Positions 24,538 through 61,400 of a DNA stretch of 64,000 nucleotides are shown here, one piece after another. Numbering within the stretch: the stretch's first letter is position 1; each line of letters opens with the position of its first letter. A model generated the notes under the pieces. That model was not told the DNA's origin, did no database searches, and saw nothing but the letters and a program-made list of their open reading frames with translations. The stretch is from the IMG/VR virus record IMGVR_UViG_3300017917_001996, positions 124,001 through 188,000 of that record, one strand, 5' to 3'. The translations under genes and the position numbers were made by a program.

Positions 24538-24894
24538 ATGGCCGCGCCAAATTTAACCACAACTACGTCTATTATAGGCAAAACTAAAGCAGATTGGATT
24601 CCAGCTACGCTAACAGCCATTCTTACTAATACGGCCAACAGTTCACAAGCATACAGAATAAACGTACTATATGTAACAAACTTGAGCGCATCAGATTCAA
24701 CAGTAACTGTAGATCTTTATAGGAATTCAATTAGTATTAAATTAGCCAATAATATTCCAGCACCTACACAAACATCATTGGTAGTTATCGGTAAAGATAC
24801 CAGCATTTATCTCGAAGAGGGCGATTCTTTACGTATTTCCGCAGGCTCAGCTAGTACGTTACAGTATGTTATTTCCTACGAAATTATGAGTTAA
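24538..24894 (+). CDS. ~120-aa fibre adaptor-family protein
   Basis: MAAPNL... / IYLEEGDSL / ISYE..S; paralog of 32948, 34683, 44700 and the N-domain of 8123. Confidence 0.7.
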   Translation: MAAPNLTTTTSIIGKTKADWIPATLTAILTNTANSSQAYRINVLYVTNLSASDSTVTVDLYRNSISIKLANNIPAPTQTSLVVIGKDTSIYLEEGDSLRISAGSASTLQYVISYEIMS

Positions 24895-24901
24895 TTAGAA
24901 A

Positions 24902-27900
24902 ATGACGATACGTTACCTACGTCAGCCGCCGGTATTAAACAACCTAAGTAAATCGTCGAATGTAAGTTCGACAGTACTAGGAACGCCCCTACGAATTACC
25001 AATGCTGCTGCTAGTACGTCGTTTACAACTGGTGCATTGATTGTCACCGGTGGCGTAGGTATTTCGGGTAACTTAAACGTTGCTAACGTAAGAGCCAATA
25101 CTGTTAGCGGAACTATTACCACTGCAAATCAACCCAATATTACTAATATTGGTGTGCAGCAAAATTTTACAGCAGTTAATGTAACTATTACTGGTAACCT
25201 AGTTTTAGCTGGTAACCTTTCTACTGTTAGTTCTGAAAATTTATCTGTTTCGGATTCTCTATTAGAAATCCACACCAGTGGAACAGCATTAACTGTTGAC
25301 GACGGCAGAGACTTAGGTCTTGCTATTCATTACTATAAAACTGGTGACCAAACTGCGTTTTTAGTCTGGGACAATGCCACTGGCAGTTTGAAGTATTACG
25401 CCGATGGTTCAGCTAGCGTTAGTGGTGTTGTATCCGGTACACTGGGTACAATTAACGCTGGCGAATTTATTGCGTCGAATATTACACCTTCGACTAGTAC
25501 ATTAACTGGTGCTTTACAAGTAGCTGGTGGTGCTGGTATTCAAGGTAATGTTTTTGCTGGTGCAGTATATACAAACAATTTATATTACGCCAATGGTAGT
25601 CCGTACAGTTCTTCCATGGGTGCAACTGGTGCCCAGGGTCCGATTGGTGCAACTGGTGCCCAAGGTGCTACAGGCGCTGGCTACACAGGAAGTCGAGGTG
25701 ACACTGGTTTAACTGGTGCAACTGGACCAATTGGTGCAACTGGTTTTGGTGTTCCAGGACAAGCAGGTTACACGGGTAGCCAAGGTATACCAGGTATAGC
25801 TGGTGTACAAGGTGCAACTGGCGCAAGCGGTATAGCAGGACCTGTAGGCGGCCTTGGCGCTACAGGTGCAACTGGACCAGCTGGCGCACCAGGAACTATT
25901 GGCCAGACAGGTTATACTGGTAGTGCAGGCTCAGCAGGCTCAGCAGGCGCACAAGGTGCAACTGGTGCAAGCGGCATAGCAGGACCAGCTGGTAGTACTG
26001 GACCTACTGGTTACACAGGTAGTCGGGGCATTGCCGGAACAGCAGGTACAGCCGGCGCAACTGGTGCCACGGGACCAGCCGGTTTACCTGGCGCAGCAGG
26101 TATTGATGGTGCAACAGGTGCAACAGGCTCTGTGGGACCTGCAGGTCCTGCGGGCGAAACTGGTGCTACGGGCTTACCTGGATTACCTGGCGCAGCAGGC
26201 CTAGACGGAGCAACCGGTGCCACAGGTATTGCTGGACCTGCAGGTCCTATAGGAGAAACGGGTGCAACTGGTCCAATTGGATTACCTGGTACAGCAGGTA
26301 TTGATGGTGCTACTGGCGCTACGGGTATAGCAGGTCCCGTTGGACCAGCAGGCGAAACGGGTGCAACAGGACCGGCTGGTTTATCTGGCGCAGCAGGCCT
26401 AGACGGAGCAACCGGTGCCACAGGTATTGCAGGTCCAGCCGGTCCTGTTGGTGAAACAGGTGCAACTGGTCCAATTGGATTACCTGGTACAGCAGGTATT
26501 GATGGTGCTACTGGTGCTACGGGTATTGCCGGTCCAGTGGGTCCGTTAGGTTCAACAGGTGCTACGGGTTTAACTGGTGCTACTGGTACACCTGGCAATG
26601 TTGGTTACACAGGTAGCCAAGGTTTAGCGGGTACAGCAGGACGTGATGGGGAAGCCGGTGCAACTGGTCCAATTGGATTACCTGGCGCAGCGGGCCGCGA
26701 TGGTTCTACAGGTGCAACTGGTATAGCTGGTCCAGTAGGTCCTGCAGGTCTAACAGGAGCAACAGGCCCTGCAGGTTTACAAGGTACAGCAGGTATTGAT
26801 GGTGCTACTGGTGCTACGGGTATTGCCGGTCCCGTTGGACCAGCAGGCGAAACGGGCGCAACTGGTCCAATTGGATTACCAGGCGCAGCAGGTATTGATG
26901 GTGCCACCGGTGCTACAGGTATTGCCGGTCCAGTGGGTCAAGATGGCGCAACAGGAGCAACAGGACCCGCAGGACAAATAGGTTTGTCAGGGCAAGATGG
27001 TGCTACTGGTGCTACGGGCATTGCTGGACCAGTTGGCCCTGCAGGTGAAACAGGTGCAACAGGACCTGCAGGATTACAAGGTGTAGCAGGAACAGACGGT
27101 GCTACCGGTGCCACAGGTATTGCAGGTCCAGTAGGTCCTGCAGGTGAAACAGGTGCAACTGGTCCAATTGGATTACCTGGTACAGCAGGCCGCGATGGAG
27201 CAACAGGTGCCACAGGTATTGCTGGACCAGTAGGTCAAGACGGTGCTACTGGTGCTACTGGTCCTGCTGGACAAATTGGCTTACCAGGTCAAGACGGTGC
27301 TACTGGTGCTACAGGTATTGCAGGTCCAGTTGGTCCTATAGGAGAAACAGGTGCAACTGGTCCAATTGGTTTACCTGGCGCAGCGGGCCGCGATGGTTCT
27401 ACAGGTGCAACTGGTATAGCTGGTCCGGTTGGCCAAGACGGTGCTACTGGTGCAACTGGTCCAATTGGTTTAACAGGTTCTCCTGGTATAGATGGAGCAA
27501 CAGGTGCCACAGGTATTGCAGGTCCAGTAGGTCCAATTGGTTTAACTGGTTCTACAGGACCTCAGGGCCCAGCGGGCGTTAATGGAAGAGATGGCGCCAC
27601 GGGTGCTACAGGTATTGCAGGTCCAGTGGGGCAAGACGGTGCTACAGGTGCAACTGGTCCTGCTGGACAGATTGGTTTAACAGGTAGAGATGGTTCCACT
27701 GGTGCAACTGGTGTTGCTGGACCAGTTGGTCCTATAGGAGAAACAGGTGCCACTGGCCCGATTGGTCAAACAGGTCTTCCGGGCAGGGATGGTTCCACTG
27801 GTGCAACTGGCCCAGTGGGCCCAGTAGGACAAAATGGAGCCACTGGTGCAACCGGTCCAATTGGTCAAACGGGTCTTCCGGGTCGTGATGGCTCAACGGG

Positions 27901-29449
27901 TGCAACTGGCCCAGTGGGCCCAGTGGGTCAGAGCGGTGCTACAGGTGCCACTGGCCCTATAGGTTTACCTGGTATAGCAGGTATTGATGGTGCTACTGGT
28001 GCTACGGGTATAGCAGGTCCAGTAGGTCCTATTGGTCCAGCTGGTGCAACAGGCTTGATAGGAGCTACAGGTCTACAAGGTGATCTAGGTTACACTGGTA
28101 GTCAAGGTATTCCAGGATCACCAGGTGGCGCAACTGGCCCAATTGGTTTTACAGGTAGTTCGGGCAGTACTGGCCCAATTGGTTTTACAGGTAGTCGAGG
28201 ACTATCTGGATTTGTTGGATCGTCGGGCGATTTTGGAGCAACTGGTTTAACTGGTTATACAGGTAGTCAAGGTTTACCAGGCGCAGCAGCAGATAAAGGT
28301 TTCACTGGTAGTCAAGGTGAAGTAGGTTTTACTGGTAGTTCGGGTATAAACGGGTATACAGGTAGTCAGGGTATACCTGGTGCTTATGCAGCAATTGGTT
28401 ATACTGGTAGCCAAGGAGACCTAGGTTATACTGGAAGTCAGGGTATCCCTGGCGAGTTTGCAGCATTAGGTTATACTGGATCTAAGGGTGACACAGCTAC
28501 TAACTTTACTGGCCCTCAAGATATCGGAGTCATTGGTGGCAATAGTTATACACTAGCGACATTTGATGCTGGTAATTTACTAAAATTAGACAGTACACAA
28601 GAGTTTACCTTAACAATTCCAACAAACGACCAAGAGCCATTTTTAATTGGACAGCGTGTTGATATTCAACAAGCAAACATTGGTTCTATAAACATAGTTA
28701 CAAGTACTGGCGTTACACTGCAATCAGTTGGAATTTCAGGATTAGTTACACGATATTCTGTTGGTACACTGTTTAAGGTTGATTTTAACGAATGGTTGTT
28801 TGTTGGACCAGAATCAACAGGTTACACAGGTAGCCGGGGAGATTTAGGTTACACAGGTAGCCGGGGCGAAAAAGGTGATACAGGGTTAACAGGGTATACA
28901 GGTAGTCAAGGTATACCTGGTGCTTATGCAGCAATTGGTTATACGGGCAGTATAGGTTATACTGGATCCGTTGGTGAACAAGGGCTCAGAGGATATGTAG
29001 GAAGCTCTGCAACTATAGCAGTAGGATTACTTGATTCTAATAACCAACTTGGTAATGTTGTAACACAAATAAACACTATCCAATTTGATCAAGAATCTGG
29101 TTTTAGCGTAACTGATTTAGGTTCAGGTGCAGTAAGAATTTCGGGCGGAGCAGGTGGCACAACTGGCAATGTTTCGTCATTCAGATTCTGGGAAGTCGAT
29201 GGGCAAAATACGCTGGTTGCCAGCGGTTCTGACACTGTTAAATTTGTTGCCGGTAGCGGTATTACTATAGAAACAGATGATTCAACAAACCCAAAAACTA
29301 TAATCTTTTCTGCTCCTAGATTTACTGTTAATTTGGATGCAAATGGTGTTAATAGACCTTACGGGTTAGATGCTTATTATGATGGCGGATATCCGGACAG
29401 CGTTTACGGAGGCATTGTTCCGCTTGATGCAGGCGGTATTGACTTTTGA
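24902..29449 (+). CDS. Very long collagen-like fibre protein
   Basis: About 950 residues of Gly-X-Y repeats flanked by fibre-shaft domains; ends LDAGGIDF. Confidence 0.9.
25619..28495 (+). repeat. Collagen Gly-X-Y array with 99-nt unit and 198-nt higher-order period
   Basis: Unit [33 protein letters not shown] (33 aa); identical DNA stretches at 26191/26389 and 26281/26479. Confidence 0.9.
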
Positions 29450-29456
29450 ATAAATA
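29449..29456 (+). promoter_or_regulatory. Late promoter box (AATAAATA)
   Basis: Intergenic TAAATA. Confidence 0.6.
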
Positions 29457-29479
29457 GAGTATAAACGGATCGAATCTTT

Positions 29480-29923
29480 ATGGCAGTTCAGATACAATTA
29501 CGGAGAGGCACATCAGCTGAGTGGTCTTCAGTTAACCCTGTTATCGCACAGGGTGAATTTGTCATTGAACTCGACACAGGGCGTTTTAAGTTAGGTAACG
29601 GCGTAGATCGCTGGAATAACTTAAATTATAACGGATTTATAGGACACGGCAGCGACCCAAGTAACTGGAATACTAATGTAAAACTTGGCTTGTACGATGT
29701 AAATAGGCTTAGCTGGAGCGGAACTTTAGGTTCCCCTACTGATGCCGTCCCTAAAGGTTTACTAGCAGTTTATGTTAGTGGAACTAGCATCGTTCAGAGA
29801 TATCAACCTACTAATGATGCATTAGTTACAGTTGAGTATGTTCGTACAAAATTTGGAATTGAAGATTGGAGCCCATGGTCTCAAGCAACCGATGGTGCTA
29901 AAGTTGATGGTGGCACTTTCTGA
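29480..29923 (+). CDS. Short fibre segment with Mtd-N/hyaluronidase-N-like domain
   Basis: IQLRRGT.AEW...NPV.A.GE...E.DTGRFKLGNG...WN.L; ends VDGGTF. Confidence 0.75.
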   Translation: MAVQIQLRRGTSAEWSSVNPVIAQGEFVIELDTGRFKLGNGVDRWNNLNYNGFIGHGSDPSNWNTNVKLGLYDVNRLSWSGTLGSPTDAVPKGLLAVYVSGTSIVQRYQPTNDALVTVEYVRTKFGIEDWSPWSQATDGAKVDGGTF

Positions 29924-29931
29924 CCGTTTTT

Positions 29932-29939
29932 TATAAATA
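29932..29939 (+). promoter_or_regulatory. Consensus late promoter TATAAATA
   Basis: Perfect intergenic match. Confidence 0.75.
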
Positions 29940-29961
29940 TAGAATAAGAGGAAACTAACAA

Positions 29962-31263
29962 ATGGCAAATAAGATTATACTTAAAAGGGCAAATACCACC
30001 GGTAAAATACCATTGGTTACTGATATTGACCTTGGCGAATTGGCTATTAACACCTTCGATGGTAGACTATTCGCCAAGAAAAACGATGGTACAGCCAGCA
30101 TTATTGACTTAAAACAAAACGACCCTATTCGTGTTTTAGGCGACGCAACAAGCGCATATGCTTGGGACCAAAGTACATATACCAGTAACGTCACAATGAC
30201 GTTAAACACCGTTAATGCCAATGTTGGCACATACGGTGGTAAAGCTGGTGGTGTTATTGAAATCCCTATTTTCACCGTTAACGAAAAAGGTTTAGTTACT
30301 AGCGTAACAACAACTACCTATTCTGCATCTGGCGATTTAGGTACAATGGCCAGCCAAAATGCTAATGCTGTCGCTATTACTGGTGGTACAATTGATGGTA
30401 CCGCAATTGGTCAGACAACAAGAGCAGCTGGTAATTTTACAGACATTGACACCACTGGTAACGTAACCATTGGCGGTAAGTTATTCAGTAATGACTTAAC
30501 TGCAACAAGTATTACAGTTGATGGTGACACCGTAATTTCGGGTAACTTAACTGTTCAAGGTGTAACAACAACTGTTAACTCTAACACAGTTAGTGTTGGA
30601 GACCTAAACATCCAATTAGCTAAAGATGCGCTAAACGCAGCTCAAGCAAACGGCGGCGGTATTACCGTTGTTGGGCCAGCGACACCGGCTACGATTACAT
30701 ATGCTAGCCTAGATGATAGCTGGAACCTTAACAAAGCGTTAAACGGTGTTTCTGCAGACTTCACAGGTAACGTAGGTGCTGATTTTGGTGATTTCAGTAG
30801 CAACGTTTCTGTCGGCGATAGCTTATCTGTTGCTAATTCGGCTACAATTGGTAATTTAACAATTACAGGAACAACCAGCTTAGGTTCTATTACTACCAGC
30901 GGTGTATCAGCAGGAAGAATAGTTTATGGTGGCACAGGCGGTGTTTTAACTTCTGAATCTGCCCTAACTTATAATGCTACTAGCAATACACTGACGTTGA
31001 CCAACTTAGTTGGTACAACAGCTAATTTATCTAACACTCTAGATGTTTCTGGTGTTACTACACTAAAGAGTACTGTAAACCTTACAGACATTAGCACATA
31101 TACTGTGGCTAATTATACAACTGGTGCATTCACCGTTGCCGGTGATGCAAGTTTTGCCAAGAGTATTCAGGTTCAAACTGATATCCGTGCAGCAGGTACA
31201 ATTTATAAAGCTGGTTTAGAAGTTCTAAATACCGGAGATACAATCGACGGCGGATCTTATTAA
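29962..31263 (+). CDS. Tail fibre segment with T4 gp37-like N-terminus
   Basis: I.LKR....G..P.....GELAIN..D..LF.K resembles the T4 gp37 N-terminus; ends IDGGSY. Confidence 0.75.
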   Translation: MANKIILKRANTTGKIPLVTDIDLGELAINTFDGRLFAKKNDGTASIIDLKQNDPIRVLGDATSAYAWDQSTYTSNVTMTLNTVNANVGTYGGKAGGVIEIPIFTVNEKGLVTSVTTTTYSASGDLGTMASQNANAVAITGGTIDGTAIGQTTRAAGNFTDIDTTGNVTIGGKLFSNDLTATSITVDGDTVISGNLTVQGVTTTVNSNTVSVGDLNIQLAKDALNAAQANGGGITVVGPATPATITYASLDDSWNLNKALNGVSADFTGNVGADFGDFSSNVSVGDSLSVANSATIGNLTITGTTSLGSITTSGVSAGRIVYGGTGGVLTSESALTYNATSNTLTLTNLVGTTANLSNTLDVSGVTTLKSTVNLTDISTYTVANYTTGAFTVAGDASFAKSIQVQTDIRAAGTIYKAGLEVLNTGDTIDGGSY

Positions 31264-31265
31264 AG

Positions 31266-31273
31266 ACTAAATA
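31266..31273 (+). promoter_or_regulatory. Late promoter box (ACTAAATA)
   Basis: Intergenic TAAATA. Confidence 0.55.
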
Positions 31274-31302
31274 AGTGTATTGAAGTTTTAATACGCACAA
31301 GT

Positions 31303-31337
31303 AATTGGGAGACTTCAATAGTCTCCCAATTTTATTT
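31303..31337 (+). terminator. Perfect 12-bp hairpin, terminator- or attenuator-like
   Basis: AATTGGGAGACT-TCAAT-AGTCTCCCAATT followed by TTATTT. Confidence 0.65.
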
Positions 31338-31375
31338 GTACGTTAGCTTTCTAGCTTTTAGGACAGACCATAACT

Positions 31376-32941
31376 ATGGCAAACATAATCAAATTAAAAC
31401 GATCTAGTGTTCCAGGAAAAATTCCGGATCCAAATGATTTAAGCGTTGGCGAAATTGCTATTAACACCGCCGACGGGGTTTTATACACAAAACATAGCGA
31501 TAACACAATTAAGTCGATTGGCAACGTTCAGTCGTTTATTAGCAATGTAACATTAGACACAGTTACACTTGCAGGAAATTTTAGCAATCAAGCAATTGAT
31601 ATTAAAGATACTACTATTAGTGCCAATGTATTAACTGGTGCACTAACAGTAGCAGGCGGTGTTGGTGTGCAAGGAAATATCAATGCTGGTAATGTTAATA
31701 CCACTCATATCGGTGCTAGCTCCATTTTAGCTAGCACTGTTTATACCAATAGTTTATTGTTTAGTAATGGTGCTCCTTACATTGCACCAGTTACTGGTAG
31801 CTCAAACATTCTTCACGTTGCAAAAAACGGCAGTGATACCAACGATGGCTCAATTAACAAGCCATTCCTTACTATTAAAGCAGCACTAGCAGCAGCTACA
31901 ACAGGACAAGCAGTTAATGTTGCTCCTGGTACGTATATTGAAGATAATCCTGTAACTATTCCAGCAGGTGTAAGTCTTAAAGGCGATGACCTACGCACGG
32001 TATTTGTTAAACCACTAAATCCTAGCAGCGATTTATTTTATGTTAAAAATGCCAGTTATGTTTGGGGATTAACAATCATTGATTATTTGGCCAACGGATT
32101 TGCATTTGATCCATCGACTCCGACGCAAAACATCTACGTAAGTCCTTATATTCAAAACGTTACCAGCAGTACTACAACAGGCACCTGTGTTAAGATTGAC
32201 GGTAGCTTGAATAGTTCTGTTAGTACCAAGGCAATGATCCTAGGGTTTTTAACAATAATCAATCGTGGCGGCAAAGGTGTACACCTTATAAACAAAGCAT
32301 ACAGTCAAGCAGTTAACGTATACACTATTGCGGCTGATGTGGGTGTGTTAGCCGAAAGCGGATCGTTTATTACACTCAACGGTAGCGACAACGGAATTGG
32401 TAATTATGGTCTAAAAGCCGACGGTAAAGGTCCTGAAGAGTTATCTGGTCAAACCTACGGAACAAGTATTCAAGGGATATTCCAAATTAGAAATCTAGCA
32501 GGTCAACCAAAAGTTAATCAGGTCATGACCATTGATGGCGATTCCAATTATTACAGTATTGATACTGTTTCTCAAGTTGATGGGTTAACTTGGCAAGTAA
32601 GCATACAAGAGGTTTATACTGATACTCTAGCTGCTAATACCACTGTTCGTTTTTACCAGCGCAGTGCTATTATTGCCAGCGCACATACTTTTGAGTATGT
32701 AGGTGCCGGTACCAATCCTGCTACAGCATTACCTCAATATGGTGGTATTCCAGTTGAAGCTAATGAAGTTGTACAGGTCAATGGCGGTAAAGTGACATTC
32801 ACTTCAACTGACCACAAAGGAAATTTTAAAATTGGTGCAAATTTAGTCATCAATCAAACCACAGGAATTATTAACGGCGATAGTTTTAACAGAAGTATGT
32901 TTGCCTTAATGACTCCATATATTCTAGCATTGGAAGGTTAA
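31376..32941 (+). CDS. Tail fibre protein: gp37-like N-terminus plus pectin-lyase-like beta-helix
   Basis: IKLKRS..PG..P...L..GEIAIN..DG; HVAKNGSD.NDG....PFLTIK.A, V.PGTY.E and GDDLR; ends YILALEG. Confidence 0.75.
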   Translation: MANIIKLKRSSVPGKIPDPNDLSVGEIAINTADGVLYTKHSDNTIKSIGNVQSFISNVTLDTVTLAGNFSNQAIDIKDTTISANVLTGALTVAGGVGVQGNINAGNVNTTHIGASSILASTVYTNSLLFSNGAPYIAPVTGSSNILHVAKNGSDTNDGSINKPFLTIKAALAAATTGQAVNVAPGTYIEDNPVTIPAGVSLKGDDLRTVFVKPLNPSSDLFYVKNASYVWGLTIIDYLANGFAFDPSTPTQNIYVSPYIQNVTSSTTTGTCVKIDGSLNSSVSTKAMILGFLTIINRGGKGVHLINKAYSQAVNVYTIAADVGVLAESGSFITLNGSDNGIGNYGLKADGKGPEELSGQTYGTSIQGIFQIRNLAGQPKVNQVMTIDGDSNYYSIDTVSQVDGLTWQVSIQEVYTDTLAANTTVRFYQRSAIIASAHTFEYVGAGTNPATALPQYGGIPVEANEVVQVNGGKVTFTSTDHKGNFKIGANLVINQTTGIINGDSFNRSMFALMTPYILALEG

Positions 32942-32947
32942 ACCAAA

Positions 32948-33280
32948 ATGGCAGTCGCAATTAATATTTTTAAAACAGTTACAGCAAACGTAACCACAGT
33001 TGGAACTACAATTTATACTGCACCTGCAGGTTATACTTCTGTTGTCTTGCTAGCACAGGTTAGTAACATTGGTGGTAGTACTATTACAGTTGAAGCCAAC
33101 CATCTAAGAAATGGAAACCAGACTAGTATTATTAAAGGAATTTCGTTACCCACAGCTGACTCTCTTAGCTTGGTACAAGGAAAGATGATCCTGGAAACAG
33201 GCGATGGATTTGAAATTTCTGCTAGTGCAAATGCCGCAGCTCAAATTGTATTAAGCCTATTAGAAACTGCAAACCCATAA
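32948..33280 (+). CDS. ~110-aa fibre adaptor-family protein
   Basis: KMILETGD motif; paralog family of 24538. Confidence 0.7.
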   Translation: MAVAINIFKTVTANVTTVGTTIYTAPAGYTSVVLLAQVSNIGGSTITVEANHLRNGNQTSIIKGISLPTADSLSLVQGKMILETGDGFEISASANAAAQIVLSLLETANP

Positions 33281-34682: not shown

Positions 34683-35039
34683 ATGGCTAATCCAAATTTG
34701 GGAACAGCAACATCAATTATAGGCGATACAACAACTGCCGCCCTTACAACTACAGTAACAACAGCATTACTATCGGGTGTGTCCAATAAACTATTAAAGG
34801 TTAATAGCATAATTATTGCTAACGTAAACGGAACTAACGCTGCTAGTTGTACATTTAGTTTTTACGATGGTACCAACGATAGATATTTTGCCTATCAGAT
34901 TACAGTACCGGCAGGAAGTACGGTTGTGCTAATAGATAAGAATTCAGGTTTTTACGTCAAAGAAGGTTGTGAAATACGTGGTGGCGCAAGTTTAAATTCG
35001 TACCTTACAGCTTTAATTAGCTATGAAACACTAAGCTAA
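34683..35039 (+). CDS. ~120-aa fibre adaptor-family protein
   Basis: MANPNL / LKVNSI..AN / VPAGST...IDK / ISYE.LS. Confidence 0.7.
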   Translation: MANPNLGTATSIIGDTTTAALTTTVTTALLSGVSNKLLKVNSIIIANVNGTNAASCTFSFYDGTNDRYFAYQITVPAGSTVVLIDKNSGFYVKEGCEIRGGASLNSYLTALISYETLS

Positions 35040-44699: not shown

Positions 44700-45071
44700 A
44701 TGGCAGCACCAAATTTAATCGGCGCAACAACAATTAACGGTAAGACAACAGGAGCAAACTTGACAACCACAAGCGCAACTACTGTTTTGAACAATCCTGC
44801 AAGTAGTGGTAAATGTTTAAAAGTTAATACATTAAACGTTGCTAACTATGGAGCTTCTGCTGCAAATATTTCTATAGCTTGGAATAACGCAGCAAACTTA
44901 AGTGGTACCGATTTCGCTATTGCCGGAAACATTTCAGTTCCCGGCGGCAGTACACTAAATATCATCGATAAAACAAGTCAATACTACTTAGAAGAAAATC
45001 AGAGTTTAGGGGCAACTGCAGGCACAGCAAATACATTAGTGGTTACGTGTAGTTACGAGGATATAAGTTAA
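44700..45071 (+). CDS. ~120-aa fibre adaptor-family protein
   Basis: MAAPNL / LKVNTL.VAN / VPGGSTL.IIDK / YYLEE / SYEDIS; TAATG-coupled to the next gene. Confidence 0.7.
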   Translation: MAAPNLIGATTINGKTTGANLTTTSATTVLNNPASSGKCLKVNTLNVANYGASAANISIAWNNAANLSGTDFAIAGNISVPGGSTLNIIDKTSQYYLEENQSLGATAGTANTLVVTCSYEDIS

Positions 45072-55412: not shown

Positions 55413-58400
55413 ATGGCTGATAGATATTGGGTAGGCGGCACAGGAACCTGGAATACATTAAGTACAACCAACTGGAGTGCTACTAGCGGTGGGTCTGGCG
55501 GAGCCAGTGTGCCAACAGCAGCCGATAGTGTTTTCTTTGATCAAGCTACTACGTACACAGTTACAATGACTGGTGCATTAAACTGTTTGGACATAACAGT
55601 AAGTGCAGGCACGGTAACATTTGCAACAGGAACTACCCCTACATTAAGTGTTGCCGGAAATTGGAGTACAATTGCTAACACTGTTTGGAACAGCACAGGT
55701 ACTATTACATTTACATCAAGGACAGCCAGAACAATAAATTCTAATAATATTACTATAGCTGCGCCAGTAATATTTAATGGAATAGATGGTTCATGGACAT
55801 TACAAAATAATTTTATCACATCAAGTACATCAGGAACCACATTAACTAATGGTACTTTGTCTTTAGACACTTATACATTACAAACTTCAGCATTCTCCAG
55901 TAGTAATAGTAATAATAGAACAATTAATTTTAACACAGGCAAGATATCCATAGTAGCCTCTGCTAACGCAACAGTATGGAACACGTCTACTGTCACTAAC
56001 TTTAGTTACAACGGTACTCCAACAGTAGAATTTTCAGGCGGCGGAGTTTCTCCAGTAACTAAAACAATCAACACCGGTGTAATGTCTGAAGCGCAGGCTT
56101 TAGATTTTAGAATAATCGACACCGGAGGCTCACCTAGATACGCATTTACTACTGGAAACACTGTTGGTAATTTAACCATTAACGGTGCTCAAACTATAAA
56201 CAATATTGCAATAACGATTTTAAAATCGTTTACTCATGAAACCACCAACGGAACTACGTCATTTACTGGTGGTGCTAATGCCTGGACCTTTGCTGCTACC
56301 AGTGGCAATCATACAATTAACAATATTTCTGGGTTTTCGTACGCATTCCCTTGGACTTTTGGTAGTGCCTCGAGTACCGCAACCTGGACATTGGCAAATA
56401 ATTTAAATATCTCAACAAGTAATTTAACATTAACCAATGGTACATTAGATTTTAATAGTAAAACATTAACTGCCGGCGGTATCGTTATATTAACAGGAAC
56501 CCCAAGTATTGCTAATACTGGTACAGGCAGCTTTACAACTTCAGTACCAATAACACATACCAGTGGAACTTTTACACTTCCATTTAATGTTACTACAACT
56601 AGTGCATCAGGGTATACACTTACCGCTGGTACATTGGCATTGGGAACTAATACGTTAACTACTACAATATTCTCTAGTAGTAATTCAAATACAAGAACAC
56701 TGAACTTTGGTACAGGTAAAATTATTCTTACTGCCGGAGGAACAGTTACTCTTTGGAATACTGCAACAGTTACAAACTTATCAGTCTCGGGAACTCCTCT
56801 GGTTGAATCGATTGCACCTGGCACTTCGGTGACTAAAACAATTAATACAGGCGCACTGAGCGAAGCCAATGCAATTAGTTTTAGTTTATTAACTGGGGGT
56901 GGTAGCACAGGGGTAACTTATGCATTTACCTCAGGCAATACTGTAAAAGATTTGGTTATTAACGGTTCTGGCCAGATAATCAGTAACATAAGTATTCTCA
57001 TTTACGGTTCTTTTACCCATAGCACTGCAAACGGAACTACTACATTTACCGCTGGTACAAGCGCATGGACATTTGCAGCAACAAGTGGAAACTACAACAT
57101 TAATAACATTGCCGGCTTTACCTACGACTTCCCTTGGACCTTTGGTAGTGCCGCGAGTACAGCCACATGGACATTGGCAAATAATTTAACACTAGGTGCA
57201 ACACGACAATTAACTTTAACCAATGGCACGTTGGATTTTAATAGTAAAACGTTAAGCGCCGCAGGTATTACTATACAAACCGGGTCGCCAACTATTGCCA
57301 ATACAGGTACAGGTAGTTTTACTACAACATTACCGTTTACACATACCAGTGGTACTTTTACATTACCATTTAATGTTACCACAAGCTCAGCAACCGGTTA
57401 TACTTTAACTGCCGGTACTCTAGCATTGGGTACAAATACATTGACTACTCTGGTATTCTCTAGTAGCAACTCAAATTCAAGAACATTAAATTTTGGTAAT
57501 GGTAAAATTGTATTGAACGGATCAGTAACCGCAACTATCTGGAATACCTCCACAGTTACCGGTATGACAGTAACTGGAACATCATTGGTTGAATCTATCG
57601 GTGGAGGATCTGGTGTAACAAAAACCATCACACCAGGCGGACTGAGTGAAGCCAATGCAATTAATTTTAGTTTGTTAAATACTTCTGGTACAGTGACTTA
57701 CACAATTACTGCAGGCGCAGTTAGCAATTTAATAGTTAATGGAGTACAAACTCTAAACAATACTGCATTAACAATTTATGATAATTTTACTCACCTAACA
57801 ACAAACGGTACTACAACTTTCACTGCTGGCACTAATGCCTGGACTTTTGCTGCTACTTCAGGTACACATAATCTAGGATTTATTCAAGGCTTCACTTACG
57901 ACTTTCCGTGGACATTTAACGGCATTGGCGGAACTTGGGTATTGCCCAATAACCTAACCCTCGGTGCTACTCGTGCATTAACACTAACCAATGGTACTGT
58001 TGATTTTAATAGTAAGACCGTTTCTGCCAGCGGTATCACGGTAGTAACTGGATCTGCCACAGCTACTAACTTAACTACTACTCTAAACCTTACTCATACC
58101 AGTGGTACTCTTACACTAGGATCGGCAACTACTGTTAACAACTATACTTTAACCGCTGGTACAATAAATCTTAACTTTGATTTAACTTGTGCTACGTTTT
58201 CTAGCAACAATACAAATACAAGAACTATAGTAATCCCGCCACAATCTGCGTTGACAATTTTTGTAACAGGTAGTAATGCTACCATAGTAGATGTATCAAA
58301 CGCCACTAACTTTTCATTCTCTGGAGTTTTCAAGTTTGCTAGCACCTACACCGGATCAACTGGCACCAGAGTTTTTAACTACGGAAGTAGTGGAATTACA

Positions 58401-61400
58401 AGTTATGCTTTACAAGTTGTTGGAATGGGTGTAAGCGTTAATACTACTGGCGCAACAACAGGTTTTGTAATTCAATCGACATCAACTGACACCGTAACTT
58501 TCACTGGAAGTTATGACGATTTTGATCTTAGCGGATTTGCTGGAACATTGTCAAATACTGCTAGAAGTATCTACGGTAATTTAGTTATTCCAGCCTCGGT
58601 TACACTATCGTCGGGTACTGCTGTTACTACTTTTGCATCTCTAACCGGTCAAAATGCCGCCACTAAAACAATTACAACCAACGGCAAGACTATACCATTT
58701 CCTGTTACCGTTAACAGTGCCGCCAGTGGTTACTCGTTCCAATTAGCCGACAATTTAACTTTAAACACCGCAGTTGCAACTAACATCTTGACATTAACAG
58801 CCGGAACTTTAGATCTTAGTAATCAAGTAGTAACTGCATATGCCTTGAGTTCTAATAACTCAAATGTTAGATCTATTAACTTTGGTGCATCAGGACAAAT
58901 TATTTTAACCGCTAGTGCAGCAACAGTGGTTGATTTTACCACCGCTTCAAATTTTACATACACTGGAATTCCCTATATCTATACTAACTACGCCGGTGCT
59001 ACTGGAACTAGAACGATCAACTTTGGCGGCACTGCTGGCGCAATTACAACAAATGTTTTTGACATTACATCTAACATTTCCGGTCCAGGTTTAGTTATCG
59101 ATCCAACCGCAACTGATACAATAAGTTTAACCGGCGGCTTTGGCGCAGTTAACCTTACCGGAATATCTGCAACCATTGGTAATGCTGCTAGAACTATCTA
59201 TGGTAATTTGACCGTTCCGGCCTCAGGCGGCGCACTAACAGCAGGCACCGCAACAACTACATTATCTTCTGCAGCACTGCCTCGGAACGACAGTTACAGC
59301 ACATACTTCAGCGGAACGTCTAGAGCAACTATACCAAATTCTCCAACTTTTAATTTTGGATCGGACGCTTTTACTATAGAAGCCTGGATTTATCTTACCG
59401 GAGACCTAACAGGCGAAAACCTAATAGTCAGCTTATACGGTTACACCGATAATAGAAGATCTTGGTATTTTGGAACGCGGCTCGGAGTACTTGAATTTAG
59501 GTACGACAATGATGGAACTCTTGCAACATCAGTTAATGGAGCCACTCCGCTTTCTTTAAGAGTATGGTACCATGTAGCTGTGGTAAGGTCAACCGGAGTT
59601 AAAATATATTTAAATGGTGTACTGGATGGATCTCGCGCTACTATGGCATCCACATTGTACAATAACACTGTAGACCCTGTTTTGATAGGTGCAGTAGGAC
59701 CAAACTTAGCTGGACATTTCCCTGGCTATATTTCAAACCTACGGATAGTACGCGGTGTTGAAGTTTACACTGGTAATTTTACAGTACCAACTGGCCCATT
59801 GGGGGTTACACAACCTGCAGATACAAACATTAGCGAAATTACTGGTACACAGACAATTTTATTAACTTGCCGCAAACCTACCTTTGTTGATGATAGTACC
59901 TATGGTTGGTCAATAACACCGGTTTCAACTAGTCAGTCAGTTACCAGCCCATTTGTCTTAATAGCCTCTACTTCTGTGATAACAACTAATGAAAGAACAT
60001 TAGACTTTCCGGTCACAGTTGACCCAACTGCCGCCGGAGCAGTTCAACTTTCGGGTAACCTAACATTAGGCAGTACCAGATCACTTACCTTAACACAAGG
60101 ATCGTTGTTGCTTAACGAGAAATCTTTAACAGCACAAACATTTATTTCTAGTAACTCGAATACAAGATCAATTGATTTTGGTTTAACTGGTCGAATAATT
60201 GTAACAGGCAATGCAGCAACATTAGTCAATTTTACCACCGCAACCAATTTTACTTATTCTGGCGTGCCCTACATCTACAGTAATTACACAGGAGCCACTG
60301 GCACAAGAACTTTTAACTTTGGTGGTACAGCTGGTGCAAGTTCTAGTAATGCTTTTGATGTTACAACCAGCACTGCTGGCACAGGATTAATTATTGGGTC
60401 TACTGCTACCGATACTGTGGCACTAACTGGTGTGTTTGACAATGTTGATCTAACAGGGCTAACTTCTGTGCTCAGCAATACTGCGAGAACTGTTTACGGC
60501 AATTTAACAATTCCGGCAACAGGAGGAACATTAACAGCCGGTGCAGCAGCAACTACGCTATCATCAATATCTCTTCCTAACATTAACGGATACAGTGTTT
60601 ATTTTAATGGACTGTCATACCTTCAAGTAGAACATGACTCTTCGTTAGAATTTGGCACGGGTGCATTTACAGCAGAAGCTTGGATTTTTATCAACTTAGT
60701 AGGAAGCCCTCAAACCATTTTTAATAAAGCACCAGACTCAACACCACAGTCAGGTTGGCTCTTACAAGTATCTAGGGCAATGACACTTATTACTCGAGTC
60801 GGAGCCATACCTTACGCTAGTGGAATTTCGTTATCTTTATTTACTTGGTATCATGTTGCATTAATAAGAGACAATGCTGGTAATGTGTATCTAAGCGTAA
60901 ACGGAGCAGTTTCGCAAGTGGGGGTATCGAGTGCTAACTTGAGTCAAGTTACTCCGTTGAGAGTCGGAACAGCCATTTCTAGTGGTGCAGAGTTCCGTGG
61001 TTACATCAGCAACGCAAGACTTGTTAAAGGTGTGGCTCTCTATACTTCAAACTTTACACCTAGTACATCTCCACTGACGGCCTCAGCCGAAACAGTCTTC
61101 TTAGGATTACAAAATATCACGTTTGTTGATAATAGCACCTATGCAAAGACAATAAATGTAATTTCAGGAGCAGTTACTTCGACAAGCTCTCCTTTTCCAC
61201 TTTCTGAAATTAGTACCTCGTTGATAACTACAAACGGTCGCACACTAGATTTTCCGATTATTGTTGGTGATCCTGCAAATACCACTAACGTTGTTAAACT
61301 AGCAGGCAATCTTACACTAGGATCTACTAGGGCCCTAACGTTTAGTTACGGAACGTTAAATCTCAATGACTCTGTACTGACAGCTAGTGCATTTAGTTCA

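What the first reader, a model, noticed from the sequence alone, without database searches (positions are those of the whole stretch)
29420..31560. Second connector grammar: C-terminal DGG motif followed by an IxL[KR]R...GE N-domain, three times in a row
24902 ends LDAGGIDF and 29480 starts IQLRRG..GE. 29480 ends VDGGTF and 29962 starts IILKR..GELAIN. 29962 ends IDGGSY and 31376 starts IKLKR..GEIAIN. The N-domain resembles T4 gp37 N, which docks on gp36, and Mtd N. 31376 then ends in a hydrophobic tail feeding the adaptor grammar, so a single chain 24538-24902-29480-29962-31376-32948-33282-34683-35049 can be read from the gene order. If DGG tails are interchangeable, 29480 and 29962 could also self-polymerise.
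Basis: partly seen in the sequence, partly recalled or inferred. Interest (0 to 1): 0.6.

Follow-up and report, generated by a model that had tools for sequence, protein, structure and literature searches.

The report
Serial head-to-tail phage fibre joints
Four neighbouring tail-fibre genes of an uncultured jumbo phage appear to be joined end to end by a short C-terminal "DGG" peg that docks on the next protein's N-terminal domain. This is the same joint as T4 gp36-gp37, and it turns out to be a widespread, sequence-readable rule for how phage fibres are assembled.

Summary
ORF 24902 ends LDAGGIDF and 29480 starts MAVQIQLRRG. ORF 29480 ends VDGGTF and 29962 starts MANKIILKR. ORF 29962 ends IDGGSY and 31376 starts MANIIKLKR. 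A fourth such pair lies elsewhere in the same 250-kb phage genome.

The genome has exactly four N-domain genes, and each sits directly after one of its five DGG-tailed genes (chance about 3e-8).

The rule holds across phages:
- Of 84 IMG/VR genes ending DGG[ST][FY], found by scanning for IDGGT[FY]-stop, about 59 are followed at once by this N-domain.
- Upstream neighbours of N-domain genes carry the tail motif in 93 of 167 cases, against 22 of 778 other genes.
- T4 gp36 (DFGYY) to gp37, BPP-1 Bbp9 (DLGGIA) to Mtd, and the gene before streptococcal HylP (LDGGKK) all obey it.

Tail and N-domain subtypes covary. A 3+3 complex model of the 29962 tail with the 31376 N-domain scored ipSAE 0.90, with a best control of 0.00. 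In it the last 10 tail residues lie against N-domain residues 1-10.

Best reading: a segmented fibre 24902 → 29480 → 29962 → 31376 built from generalised gp36-gp37 joints. Binding is predicted, not measured. Joints two and three are not obviously orthogonal, so the order, branching and possible self-joining of 29962 remain open.

The parts
24902..29449 (+). Collagen-like fibre protein (1515 aa) with no N-domain of the type studied here. It is the proposed first (proximal) segment and donates tail 1.
   Evidence: Pfam Collagen E = 2.5e-140 and many PHROG tail-fibre families. The syntenic homologue in L003 ends ..FGGVPSIDGGGVVMI.
29423..29446 (+). Tail 1: the C-terminal LDAGGIDF, a variant of the D(x)GG subtype. 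The stop codon follows directly.
   Evidence: The same extended tail (..YGG..P[IL][DN][AG]GG+1-4 residues) lies upstream of the close 'MAVQIQLRRGTAAEW' N-domains in L211, L212, L214, L219, L222, L225, L226, L229, L267 and L280.
29480..29923 (+). 147-aa double-ended adaptor: a W-type (Mtd_N-like) N-domain, a small middle domain and a DGG tail.
   Evidence: Pfam Mtd_N 42.5 bits against a cut-off of 26.3. In the AF2 monomer model the N-domain has pLDDT of about 80-87. About 48 residues superpose on the HylP N-terminal domains 2c3f and 6x3m at rmsd 2.3-3.0 A and about 31% identity. The L003 homologue is 149 aa.
29480..29632 (+). N-domain of 29480 (aa 1-51), MAVQIQLRRGTSAEW..NPVIAQGE..DTGRFKLGNG; proposed acceptor for tail 1.
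   Evidence: HMM E = 1.7e-16, domain 1-51; alignment A4.
29903..29920 (+). Tail 2: the C-terminal VDGGTF.
   Evidence: This is the canonical [ILV]DGG[ST][FY]-COOH motif, conserved in alignment A2.
29962..31263 (+). 433-aa double-ended fibre segment: a P-type (gp37N-like) N-domain plus a DGG tail.
   Evidence: HMM E = 1.2e-21. The L003 homologue is 385 aa and ends TIDGGTY. 63 IMG/VR loci have related N-domains, mostly preceded by xDGG[ST][FY] tails.
29962..30120 (+). N-domain of 29962 (aa 1-53), MANKIILKRANTTGKIP..GELAINTFDGRLF; proposed acceptor for tail 2.
   Evidence: alignments A3 and A5.
31243..31260 (+). Tail 3: the C-terminal IDGGSY.
   Evidence: In the complex model, residues 66, 69 and 71-80 of the 80-residue tail fragment (so all of the last 10 residues, TGDTIDGGSY) form the whole interface on this side.
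31303..31331 (+). Terminator-like hairpin (12-bp stem followed by a T run) in the 112-nt gap before 31376.
   Evidence: This is a consensus match only; no function has been shown.
31376..32941 (+). 521-aa distal segment: a P-type N-domain, a beta-helix (DUF1565) and a conserved C-terminal fibre domain. It has no DGG tail and ends with the hydrophobic ..MTPYILALEG.
   Evidence: Pfam DUF1565 E = 1.9e-7. PHROG 17885 and 3442 C-terminal matches, and PHROG 35830/1699/19966 'long tail fiber distal subunit' at aa 5-140. The L003 homologue is 508 aa.
31376..31528 (+). N-domain of 31376 (aa 1-51), MANIIKLKRSSVPGKIP..GEIAINTADGVLY; proposed acceptor for tail 3.
   Evidence: HMM E = 7.3e-27. tblastn shows 49-51% identity to the gp37 N termini of Yersinia phage TG1 and Enterobacter phage CC31. 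In the model, residues 1-10, 15, 17-18, 21-23 and 28 contact the tail.

Best explanation
These are four consecutive structural genes of a contractile-tailed jumbo phage. Their products most likely join head to tail into one segmented fibre: 24902 (collagen rod) → 29480 (147-aa adaptor) → 29962 → 31376 (beta-helix distal segment).

Each joint would form when the extreme C-terminal strand of the upstream trimer ([ILV]-D-G-G-[ST]-[FY]-COOH, or its D(x)GG variant) pairs, in parallel and across chains, with the first beta-strand (M-A-x-x-I-x-L-K-R) of the ~50-residue N-terminal domain of the downstream trimer. That domain is the same one as the N terminus of T4 gp37 and the Mtd_N/HylP N-domain. The joint is therefore a generalised T4 gp36-gp37 joint, used three times in series here and once more elsewhere in the genome.

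What is shown:
- the motifs and the gene order;
- their genome-wide exclusivity;
- the cross-phage co-occurrence in both directions;
- the covariation of tail and N-domain subtypes;
- the homology of the N-domains.

What is inferred:
- physical binding (model only);
- trimeric state;
- the strand-pairing geometry (read from the model's contact list);
- that gene order equals assembly order.
For: Within the genome:
- There are four N-domain genes, and each lies directly after a DGG-tailed gene.

Reverse test:
- The pattern IDGGT[FY]-TAA in IMG/VR gave 83 matches in the 80 listed loci, and every one ended an ORF of at least 54 aa.
- Of 84 assessable ORFs ending DGG[ST][FY], 51 are followed within 400 nt by the N-domain at HMM E<=1e-3. 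About 8 more have Mtd_N-like starts that the HMM missed.

Forward test:
- 93/167 non-redundant upstream neighbours carry the tail motif, against 22/778 other genes (p = 3e-60).
- For the strict motif the figures are 47/167 against 7/778.
- Several of the 22 'other' genes are followed by divergent N-domains.

Position of the domain:
- It is always at the extreme N terminus: 91/91 hits and none internal among 288. The motif is at or within a few residues of the extreme C terminus.

Cultured phages obey the rule:
- T4 gp36 ends ..VQDFGYY and gp37 starts MATLKQIQFKRS.
- TG1, CC31 and KP15 gp36 end IDFGAY, QDFGTY and IDFGSY.
- BPP-1 Bbp9 ends ..ADLGGIA before Mtd.
- The genes upstream of the Javan459 HylP, Cellulophaga phi19:2, PSS2, Arthrobacter GlobiWarming, Gordonia Huffy and Stenotrophomonas AXL_1 N-domain genes end LDGGKK, LDGGNSNS, IDGGGSCD, FDGGSAA, FDGGEL and FDGGGA.
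- The T4 literature states that trimeric gp36 binds the N-terminal region of gp37 (PMC3004832).

Covariation:
- Aromatic tails go with P-type and never with W-type N-domains, 47 against 0.
- GGN[FYW] tails go with 'IRIKR' N-domains in 38 of 44 cases; mutual information z = 18.

Complex model:
- Three copies of the last 80 aa of 29962 with three copies of the first 100 aa of 31376 gave ipSAE 0.90/0.89/0.90. The best of 3 controls was 0.00.
- That mark was reached by 58 of 80 solved complexes and 2 of 110 mismatched pairs.
- Partner pLDDT was 92-93, and at least 95% of contacts agreed between runs.
- The interface is tail residues 66, 69 and 71-80 against N-domain residues 1-10, 15, 17-18, 21-23 and 28.

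Conservation:
- The related contig L003 keeps all three joints in the same order at 60-76% identity.
- Two-joint chains are common: 50 distinct cases.
Against: - No experiment or solved structure shows the joint. PDB sequence searches find only HylP N-domains, without a partner.
- The complex job used my own alignments and 3+3 chains. The tool says its calibration, made on single-chain pairs, therefore holds only roughly.
- The rule is not universal. About 30% of DGG-tailed genes are followed by something else: a head-tail adaptor (Ad2) gene, a Gly-rich protein after ~77-aa DGG-tailed proteins, or a 'PSN..YGTVTGRF' start.
- Many W-type N-domain genes of T4-like cyanophages follow small acidic ORFs rather than a DGG tail.
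- The counts are dereplicated but not corrected for phylogeny.
- Tail 1 deviates from the canonical motif.
- Tails 2 and 3 (VDGGTF, IDGGSY), and their acceptors, fall in the same subtype. Sequence alone does not fix which tail takes which N-domain.
Confidence: 0.8

Rival explanations
1. The joint chemistry is real but the architecture is different. Because tails 2 and 3 and their acceptors are the same subtype, the joints would be promiscuous. 29480's tail could take either 29962 or 31376, giving alternative distal ends. 29962 could also add to itself, giving fibres of variable length that 31376 caps. Gene order would then not equal a single fixed chain.
For: GGT[FY] and GGS[FY] tails pair with both 'IILK[KR]' and 'IKLKR' N-domains, with no visible preference. 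29962 carries both an acceptor and a donor of the same subtype. In other phages with two joints, the two are visibly orthogonal (GGN[FY] to IRIKR, then GGT[FY] to IKLKR). Here they are not.
Against: The order 149 aa, 385 aa, 508 aa and the F/Y identity of the two tails are conserved in L003. Interface residues outside the core motif (66 and 69 of the tail fragment; 15-28 of the N-domain) could supply specificity. Uncontrolled polymerisation would be unusual for a virion part. Only one pair could be modelled.
Confidence: 0.3
2. There is no direct contact. The DGG tail is a generic C-terminal cap or folding nucleus of trimeric fibres, the N-domain is a generic attachment module for baseplate or fibre, and the two sit next to each other only because fibre genes cluster and duplicate in tandem.
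For: Some DGG tails are not followed by the domain, and some N-domain genes have no DGG neighbour. 29480 and 29962 carry both features, as tandem duplicates would.
Against: Immediate adjacency occurs in about 70% of cases, while N-domain genes are at most 9% of genes even in these enriched loci. The donors are unrelated proteins of 54 to 3412 aa that share only the last 6 or so residues. Tail and N-domain subtypes covary. The model places the two conserved motifs against each other, and the controls score 0.00. In T4 the two proteins are known to bind.
Confidence: 0.07
3. The pairs are pieces of one gene, joined by read-through, frameshifting or a sequencing error, so the motifs are internal linkers rather than chain termini.
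For: The gaps are short and some pairs elsewhere overlap by 1-4 nt.
Against: Gaps range from -4 to more than 100 nt, with different frames and their own ribosome-binding sites, for example AAGAGGAAA before 29962. A terminator-like hairpin lies in one gap. In T4, gp36 and gp37 are separate polypeptides. No internal copy of the N-domain was found among 379 hits.
Confidence: 0.02

Closest known systems
Bacteriophage T4 long tail fibre distal half: the gp36-gp37 joint
   Same: gp37 starts with the same N-domain (MATLKQIQFKRS..GELAIN). gp36, the gene directly upstream, ends D-F-G-Y-Y, and T4-like phages have IDFGAY, QDFGTY and IDFGSY. Trimeric gp36 is known to bind the N-terminal region of gp37 (PMC3004832).
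   Different: T4 has one such joint, and gp36 lacks the N-domain. Here the joint is used three times in a row, by proteins that carry both halves. The tail is DGG rather than DFG. To my knowledge, and in the searched literature, the residues that form the T4 joint have not been described.
Bordetella phage BPP-1 Mtd on its tail fibre (Pfam Mtd_N, PF18454)
   Same: 29480 passes the Mtd_N gathering score. Bbp9, the gene upstream of mtd, ends ..ADLGGIA, a D-x-G-G tail like 24902's LDAGGIDF. The fourth N-domain in this genome (..RQILLKRG..GEITLDTTLNTLRIHDG) resembles Mtd's own N terminus.
   Different: Mtd is a terminal receptor-binding protein diversified by a retroelement. The proteins here are fibre segments that pass the chain on, and no DGR is seen at this locus.
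Streptococcal prophage hyaluronidase HylP (PDB 2C3F, 6X3M)
   Same: The N-domain model of 29480 superposes on the HylP N-terminal domain (rmsd 2.3-3.0 A over 47-49 residues, about 31% identity), with sequence E = 5e-4. The gene upstream of hylP in Javan459 ends ..ILDGGKK.
   Different: HylP is an enzyme-bearing terminal fibre of a siphophage of a Gram-positive host. Its structures were solved without the partner.
Anchor-and-branch receptor-binding protein systems (phages G7C and CBA120, Klebsiella KP32-type; T4 gp10-like docking domains). From my own knowledge; not tested here.
   Same: The idea is the same: short conserved N-terminal modules let separately encoded fibres or spikes dock on one another, so the architecture can be read from the genes.
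   Different: The domains differ and docking is lateral, giving branches. Here the joint is end to end, between a C-terminal hexapeptide and an N-terminal beta-domain.

Membership tests
Pfam Mtd_N (PF18454), the N-terminal domain of Mtd, HylP and tail fibres | Sequence match above the curated gathering score | tested here: met
   29480 scores 42.5 bits against a cut-off of 26.3, E = 6e-11, aa 5-42. In the genome search it scored 44.4 bits, and the fourth gene scored 25.1 bits, just under the cut-off.
Pfam Mtd_N (PF18454) | The same match for 29962 and 31376 | tested here: not met
   No Pfam Mtd_N hit at E<=0.1. Profile-profile comparison nevertheless links their N-domain family to the Mtd_N-like one: 93% probability, E = 3e-7, 41 columns. 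They are homologous but form a distinct subfamily.
Pfam Mtd_N (PF18454) | Fold like the solved N-terminal domains | tested here: met
   The AF2 model of 29480 has N-domain pLDDT of about 80-87. Foldseek gives 2c3f, 2dp5 and 6x3m at probability 1.00 and rmsd 2.3-3.0 A over 47-49 residues, although E is only about 0.03 because the domain is small. The model is a monomer; the trimer was not modelled.
T4 gp36-gp37 type fibre joint | The acceptor has the gp37 N-terminal domain at its extreme N terminus | tested here: met
   PHROG 35830, 1699 and 19966 'long tail fiber distal subunit' match aa 5-140 of 31376. tblastn gives 49-51% identity to the gp37 N termini of TG1, PG7 and CC31. HMM domains start at residue 1.
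T4 gp36-gp37 type fibre joint | The donor is encoded directly upstream and ends in D-[GF]-G-x-aromatic | tested here: met
   29480 ends VDGGTF and 29962 ends IDGGSY. T4 gp36 ends DFGYY, and TG1, CC31 and KP15 end DFGAY, DFGTY and DFGSY. 24902 (DAGGIDF) meets this only loosely.
T4 gp36-gp37 type fibre joint | The donor is homologous to gp36 over its length | tested here: not met
   No PHROG or Pfam gp36-like hit for 24902, 29480 or 29962. The donors share only the last 6 or so residues. They work like gp36 at the joint but are not gp36 family members.
T4 gp36-gp37 type fibre joint | Physical binding of the donor C terminus to the acceptor N-domain | tested here: inconclusive
   The model supports binding: ipSAE 0.90 against a best control of 0.00 (the mark was reached by 58 of 80 solved complexes and 2 of 110 mismatched pairs). 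Partner pLDDT was 92-93 and at least 95% of contacts agreed between runs. A model does not show binding, and only one of the four pairs was modelled.
T4 gp36-gp37 type fibre joint | Both partners are parallel homotrimers | not testable with these tools
   Assumed from fibre biology (PMC3004832). The 3+3 model was confident, but other stoichiometries were not compared.

The most novel reading that the evidence does not exclude
The DGG tail and the gp37N/Mtd_N domain form a universal, sequence-readable connector code of tailed phages. A free C-terminal hexapeptide strand pairs with the first strand of a ~50-residue N-terminal trimer. Orthogonal subtypes exist: D(x)GG+1-4 residues with the 'IQLRRGT..W' type, DGG[ST][FY] with the 'IKLKRS..P' type, and GGN[FYW] with the 'IRIKR' type. 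These let one virion carry several non-crossing joints and let evolution shuffle fibre segments like bricks. Fibre connectivity, T4's uncharacterised gp36-gp37 joint included, could then be predicted and re-wired from sequence alone. Further grammars seen here (a hydrophobic tail followed by a ~110-aa adaptor; IDGGTA followed by a 'PSN..YGTVTGRF' start) would belong to the same kit.
Probability: 0.5. Interest if true: 0.8.

Novelty: new variant of a known kind. Interest (0 to 1): 0.66.

Why it matters
Tail fibres decide which hosts a phage can attach to, yet in metagenomic phages their many fibre genes cannot currently be assembled into an architecture on paper. A six-residue tail and a 50-residue N-domain mark who docks on whom. 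The evidence for that is co-occurrence in hundreds of unrelated phages, subtype covariation and a confident interface model. If it holds:

- Fibre chains can be read from gene order and motif subtype.
- 'Hypothetical' or 'structural' proteins can be annotated as donors, acceptors or double-ended adaptors.
- The joint between T4 gp36 and gp37, known for decades only at low resolution, gets a concrete residue-level hypothesis that can be tested.
- The joint is a natural break-point for building chimeric fibres in laboratory phages.

The locus itself is an extreme but not unique example. It has three joints in series. Two in series are common, and three were seen in two other contigs, L003 and L225.

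Tried and rejected
Single N-domains were used instead.
- The first DNA pattern, DGGTF-stop, had too few specified bases. It was extended by one codon to IDGGT[FY]-TAA, so the reverse test samples only Ile at position -6 and TAA stops.
- DNA similarity to cultured phages gave only two weak cyanophage or marine hits, so no close cultured relative is known.
- PDB sequence searches with N-domain profiles found no gp37N-type structure and no structure with a partner bound.
- Literature searches found no description of the joint's residues. I searched for the motif strings, for gp36/gp37 termini, for Mtd/Bbp9, for Mtd_N and for 'C-terminal motif ... docking'. The Mtd_N search was swamped by 'mtDNA'. 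Absence from this open-access library does not prove novelty.
- My first N-domain HMM missed Mtd_N-like and other divergent starts, so the co-occurrence counts are lower bounds.
- The AF2 monomer model of 29480 is confident only for the N-domain (mean pLDDT 67.5). The middle domain gave no clear fold match.
- Gene fusion was considered and rejected: no internal copy of the domain among 379 hits.
- Tandem duplication as the sole cause was considered and rejected: 24902 and the 164-aa gene at genome 244614 are donors without the N-domain, and 31376 is an acceptor without the tail.
- The other three pairs and the self-pairs could not be modelled, because complex prediction allows one job.
- No claim here rests on the absence of relatives.

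Full report
**Setting**

The window is bases 124001-188000 of a 250,289-bp IMG/VR virus record judged 71% complete. It encodes a portal, a head protease, a major head protein and two sheath-like proteins. It is therefore a large contractile-tailed phage. Its only DNA-level relatives among cultured phages are weak cyanophage or marine hits. From about 20 kb to the end, the window is an almost unbroken run of large fibre-like genes on the + strand.

**The observation**

- 24902-29449 is a 1515-aa collagen-like protein (Pfam Collagen E = 2.5e-140). It ends ..[15 protein letters not shown].
- 29480-29923 (147 aa) starts MAVQIQLRRGTSAEW and ends ..KVDGGTF.
- 29962-31263 (433 aa) starts MANKIILKRANTTGKIP..GELAIN and ends ..TIDGGSY.
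- 31376-32941 (521 aa) starts MANIIKLKRSSVPGKIP..GEIAIN and ends with a hydrophobic ..MTPYILALEG.

A fourth pair lies outside the window. The ORF at genome 244614-245108 (164 aa) ends ..LKIDGGTI. It overlaps the start of 245105-249067 (1320 aa), whose residues 11-64 are the same domain.

I built an HMM from 26 N-domains. In the whole genome it hits these four ORFs (E = 7e-27 to 4e-11) and nothing else, even at E<=10. Five of about 250 gene-like ORFs carry a D(x)GG-type tail, and four of those five are the immediate upstream neighbours of the four N-domain genes. Random placement would give that about 3e-8 of the time.

**What the N-domain is**

- 29480 passes the Pfam Mtd_N gathering score (42.5 bits against 26.3). 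It also hits PHROGs annotated as tail fibre, tail spike and hyaluronidase.
- Its modelled N-domain superposes on the N-terminal domain of the streptococcal phage hyaluronidase structures: rmsd 2.3-3.0 A over 47-49 residues, about 31% identity.
- 31376 hits PHROGs named 'long tail fiber protein distal subunit' over its first 140 residues.
- Its first 55 residues find the N termini of gp37 in T4-like phages (Yersinia TG1, Enterobacter CC31 and PG7, Klebsiella KP15 and others) and of many cyanophage fibre proteins. In total 276 phage records match.
- The two flavours are homologous by profile-profile comparison (93% probability, E = 3e-7). I call the Mtd_N-like flavour W-type (IQLRRGT..W..NP.L..GE). 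I call the gp37-like flavour P-type (IKLKRS..P...L..GELAIN).

**Does the grammar hold elsewhere?**

*Forward test.* I fetched IMG/VR loci holding relatives of each of the three N-domains: 73, 80 and 63 loci. I then read the C terminus of the gene just upstream.

- After dereplication, 93 of 167 upstream neighbours carry a D/N(x)GG-type tail, against 22 of 778 other genes in the same loci (Fisher p = 3e-60).
- For the strict motif DGG[ST][FYW]-stop the figures are 47/167 against 7/778, p = 7e-31.
- Several of the 22 'other' genes are in fact followed by divergent N-domains that my HMM missed.

*Reverse test.* This one is blind to the N-domain. I scanned IMG/VR for the DNA pattern encoding I-D-G-G-T-[FY]-TAA.

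- All 83 matches in the 80 listed loci ended an ORF of at least 54 aa.
- Of 84 assessable ORFs ending DGG[ST][FY], 51 are followed within 400 nt by the N-domain at HMM E<=1e-3. About eight more have Mtd_N-like starts below that threshold.
- N-domain genes make up at most 9% of genes even in these enriched loci.
- The donors range from 54 to 3412 aa. They share nothing but the last six or so residues (alignment A2: I, D, G, G nearly invariant).
- The domain was never internal: none of 91 hits and none of 288.

**Cultured phages**

- T4 gp36 ends ..VQDFGYY, and gp37 begins MATLKQIQFKRS..GELAIN eight bases later.
- TG1, CC31 and KP15 gp36 end IDFGAY, QDFGTY and IDFGSY.
- The T4 literature states that trimeric gp36 binds the N-terminal region of gp37 (PMC3004832). 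Recent cryo-EM work still models this region only at low resolution (bioRxiv 10.64898/2026.03.06.709160).
- In Bordetella phage BPP-1, Bbp9 ends ..ADLGGIA directly before Mtd.
- The genes upstream of W-type N-domains in six other phages end as follows:
  - Streptococcus phage Javan459 (HylP): LDGGKK
  - Cellulophaga phi19:2: LDGGNSNS
  - cyanophage PSS2: IDGGGSCD
  - Arthrobacter GlobiWarming: FDGGSAA
  - Gordonia Huffy: FDGGEL
  - Stenotrophomonas AXL_1: FDGGGA
- Prochlorococcus phage P-HM1 has TIDGGTF, then a 69-aa ORF, then the N-domain.

The rule therefore spans myo-, sipho- and podophages of Gram-negative, Gram-positive and cyanobacterial hosts.

**Exceptions**

- Some DGG-tailed genes are the last fibre gene before a head-tail adaptor (Ad2) gene (PHROG 211).
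- A family of ~77-aa proteins ends TGTLSTGTIDGGTY. Each is followed, with a 1-nt overlap, by a Gly-rich protein of roughly 300-600 aa.
- IDGGTA tails are followed by a different start, 'M..PSN..YGTVTGRF.LAY'.
- The giant W-type proteins of T4-like cyanophages follow small acidic ORFs rather than a DGG tail. Their donors, if any, are encoded elsewhere.

**Subtype code**

- In the forward sets, P-type N-domains are preceded by aromatic tails (DGG[ST][FYW]) 47 times. W-type N-domains are preceded by them zero times. W-type domains instead follow D/N(x)GG plus 1-4 non-aromatic residues, 15 times.
- The closest relatives of 29480 follow tails like 24902's..YGG..PILDAGGI..PINAGGV..PIDGGNAI.
- Among aromatic tails, position -2 = Asn (GGN[FYW]) goes with 'IRIKR' N-domains in 38 of 44 pairs. 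GGT[FY] goes with I[KQI][LIP]K[RK]. The mutual information is 18 sd above shuffles. This is not corrected for phylogeny.
- In the many two-joint chains, a small protein ending GGN[FY] feeds an 'IRIKR' protein. That protein ends DGGT[FY] and feeds an 'IKLKR' protein. The two joints of one virion therefore look orthogonal.

**Predicted interface**

I modelled three copies of the last 80 residues of 29962 with three copies of the first 100 residues of 31376, each with a 29-row alignment (A2, A3).

- ipSAE was 0.90, 0.89 and 0.90. The best of three controls scored 0.00.
- By the tool's calibration that mark was reached by 58 of 80 solved complexes and 2 of 110 mismatched pairs. The tool warns that the calibration holds only roughly here, because my own alignments and multiple copies were used.
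- Partner pLDDT was 92-93. The runs shared at least 95% of their contacts.
- The interface is tail residues 66, 69 and 71-80 (the last ten are TGDTIDGGSY). On the other side it is N-domain residues 1-10 (MANIIKLKRS), 15, 17-18, 21-23 and 28.
- The tightest pairs run in register: 72-3, 73-4, 74-4/5, 75-4/5/6, 76-6, 77-6/7/8/9, 78-8/9, 79-8. They often cross between different chain copies. I read this as parallel beta-strand pairing of the two conserved motifs around the three-fold axis. That reading is my inference from the contact list.
- No like complex is in the PDB by sequence, so the score is unlikely to come from memory of a solved structure.
- The residues that covary (tail position -2; N-domain strand positions equivalent to K6 and S10 of 31376) lie in this interface.

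**Architecture here**

The subtype code and gene order agree for joint 1: the DAGGIDF tail with a W-type N-domain. Joints 2 and 3 are both aromatic tail with P-type N-domain.

The related contig L003 keeps the same series, at 60-76% identity in the compared regions:

1. a collagen rod ending ..SIDGGGVVMI;
2. a 149-aa protein, MAIQIQLRRG ... FLDGGTF;
3. a 385-aa protein, MANKIIIKR ... TIDGGTY;
4. a 508-aa protein, MANTIKLKR ... ILALEG;
5. then the same 110-aa, 459-aa and 121-aa genes.

Double-ended proteins carrying both the N-domain and a tail are common: 134 distinct ones, 58 to 1265 aa long. Among distinct chains I counted 73 with one joint, 50 with two and 2 with three (L003 and L225).

So 24902 → 29480 → 29962 → 31376 is the most economical reading.

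It has a W-type acceptor and an aromatic donor tail, a combination never seen as a pair in the tail-unbiased forward scans. It cannot be excluded for 29962, whose donor and acceptor are the same subtype.

The links 24538-24902 and 31376-32948-33282-34683-35049 depend on another grammar.

- The four ~110-123-aa proteins of the window (24538, 32948, 34683, 44700) are paralogues. The family recurs in the fetched loci: 26 hits.
- In 14 of the 18 dereplicated cases where an upstream ORF was found, the gene before a member ends in a short hydrophobic tail. Examples are ..ALAIALG..TLVFG..AIVFG..IILGMIFN and ..YILALEG. Often that gene is a 63-131-aa protein that is little more than the N-domain.
- That adjacency looks real, but I did not test it for binding, and the role of the small proteins is unknown.

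**Comparison and novelty**

The joint works like T4 gp36-gp37, and the acceptors belong to the gp37N/Mtd_N domain family. The donors are not gp36 homologues.

What is known:
- the N-domain family;
- the fact that gp36 binds the gp37 N-terminal region;
- the general idea that fibre N termini are attachment modules (for example PMC12143355).

What I did not find described:
- the C-terminal D-G-G-x-aromatic peg as the conserved partner;
- its breadth across phages;
- its subtypes;
- its serial use by double-ended segments.

I looked in the searchable literature and in the PDB. I therefore rate this a new variant of a known kind, of moderately high interest. The main caveat is that binding is predicted, not measured.

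Noticed in passing
window 24538-24894, 32948-33280, 34683-35039, 44700-45071 (also L003:5534-5866 and L003:7237-7602, L130, L142, L350, L005, L125 and others): Four paralogous ~110-123-aa proteins belong to a family that recurs in the fetched fibre loci (26 hits). In 14 of the 18 dereplicated cases with an upstream ORF, the gene before a member ends in a short hydrophobic tail (..ALAIALG..TLVFG..AIVFG..IILGMIFN..VFGL..YILALEG). Another fibre gene usually follows. The adjacency looks real, but the function is unknown: no Pfam hit, only PHROG 1276 and 26609 of unknown function.
   Followed up: partly
genome G000:C1:244614-249067 (outside the window; L002 covers part of it): A fourth DGG-tail and N-domain pair in the same genome. 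A 164-aa ORF ending LKIDGGTI overlaps by 4 nt a 1320-aa ORF whose N-domain resembles BPP-1 Mtd's own N terminus.
   Followed up: partly
L225, L229, L248, L280, L290 (downstream of the W-type N-domain proteins at about 2501): Tails ending IDGGTA are followed about 20 nt later by a different conserved start, M(A)..PSN[LV].YGTV.G.F.LAY.DS. This may be a third acceptor type for DGG tails.
   Followed up: no
L086:9528-9758(-), L118:2438-2668, L138:9628-9858(-) and seven similar loci: A conserved ~77-aa protein (MSNY[TS]K.T[DN]F.AKD...TGTLSTGTIDGGTY) is always followed, with a 1-nt overlap, by a Gly-rich protein of roughly 300-600 aa that lacks the N-domain. Neither has a PHROG hit.
   Followed up: partly
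L094, L112, L125, L128, L130, L136, L005, L350 (63-75-aa ORFs): Mini-proteins that are essentially the N-domain plus a hydrophobic tail. They sit between a DGG-tailed fibre gene and a ~110-aa family gene or a head-tail adaptor gene.
   Followed up: no
window 31303-31331 (+): A strong terminator-like hairpin (12-bp stem, 5-nt loop, then a T run) in the 112-nt gap between 29962 and 31376. The distal segment may therefore be transcribed or attenuated separately.
   Followed up: no
L202 (Synechococcus phage S-IOM18) and about 45 IMG/VR loci among L221-L289: Giant structural proteins of T4-like cyanophages (more than 883 aa in the fetched stretch) have a W-type N-domain (MANRIQLRRGGAQEW) but follow small acidic, coiled-coil-like ORFs of 70-100 aa rather than a DGG tail. 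Their docking partner, if any, is encoded elsewhere.
   Followed up: no
window 55413-63434 (+): A 2673-aa protein ending ..NNGGGILL is the only D/N(x)GG-type tail in the genome that is not followed by the N-domain. The next gene (genome 187431-191555) starts MSDLTVTSFVSTG.
   Followed up: no
window 26000-28000: G+C rises to 0.57 (against about 0.40 elsewhere), with strong GC skew, inside the collagen G-x-y repeats of 24902. The long antisense ORFs there (for example 26011-26598) are by-products of the repeat.
   Followed up: no
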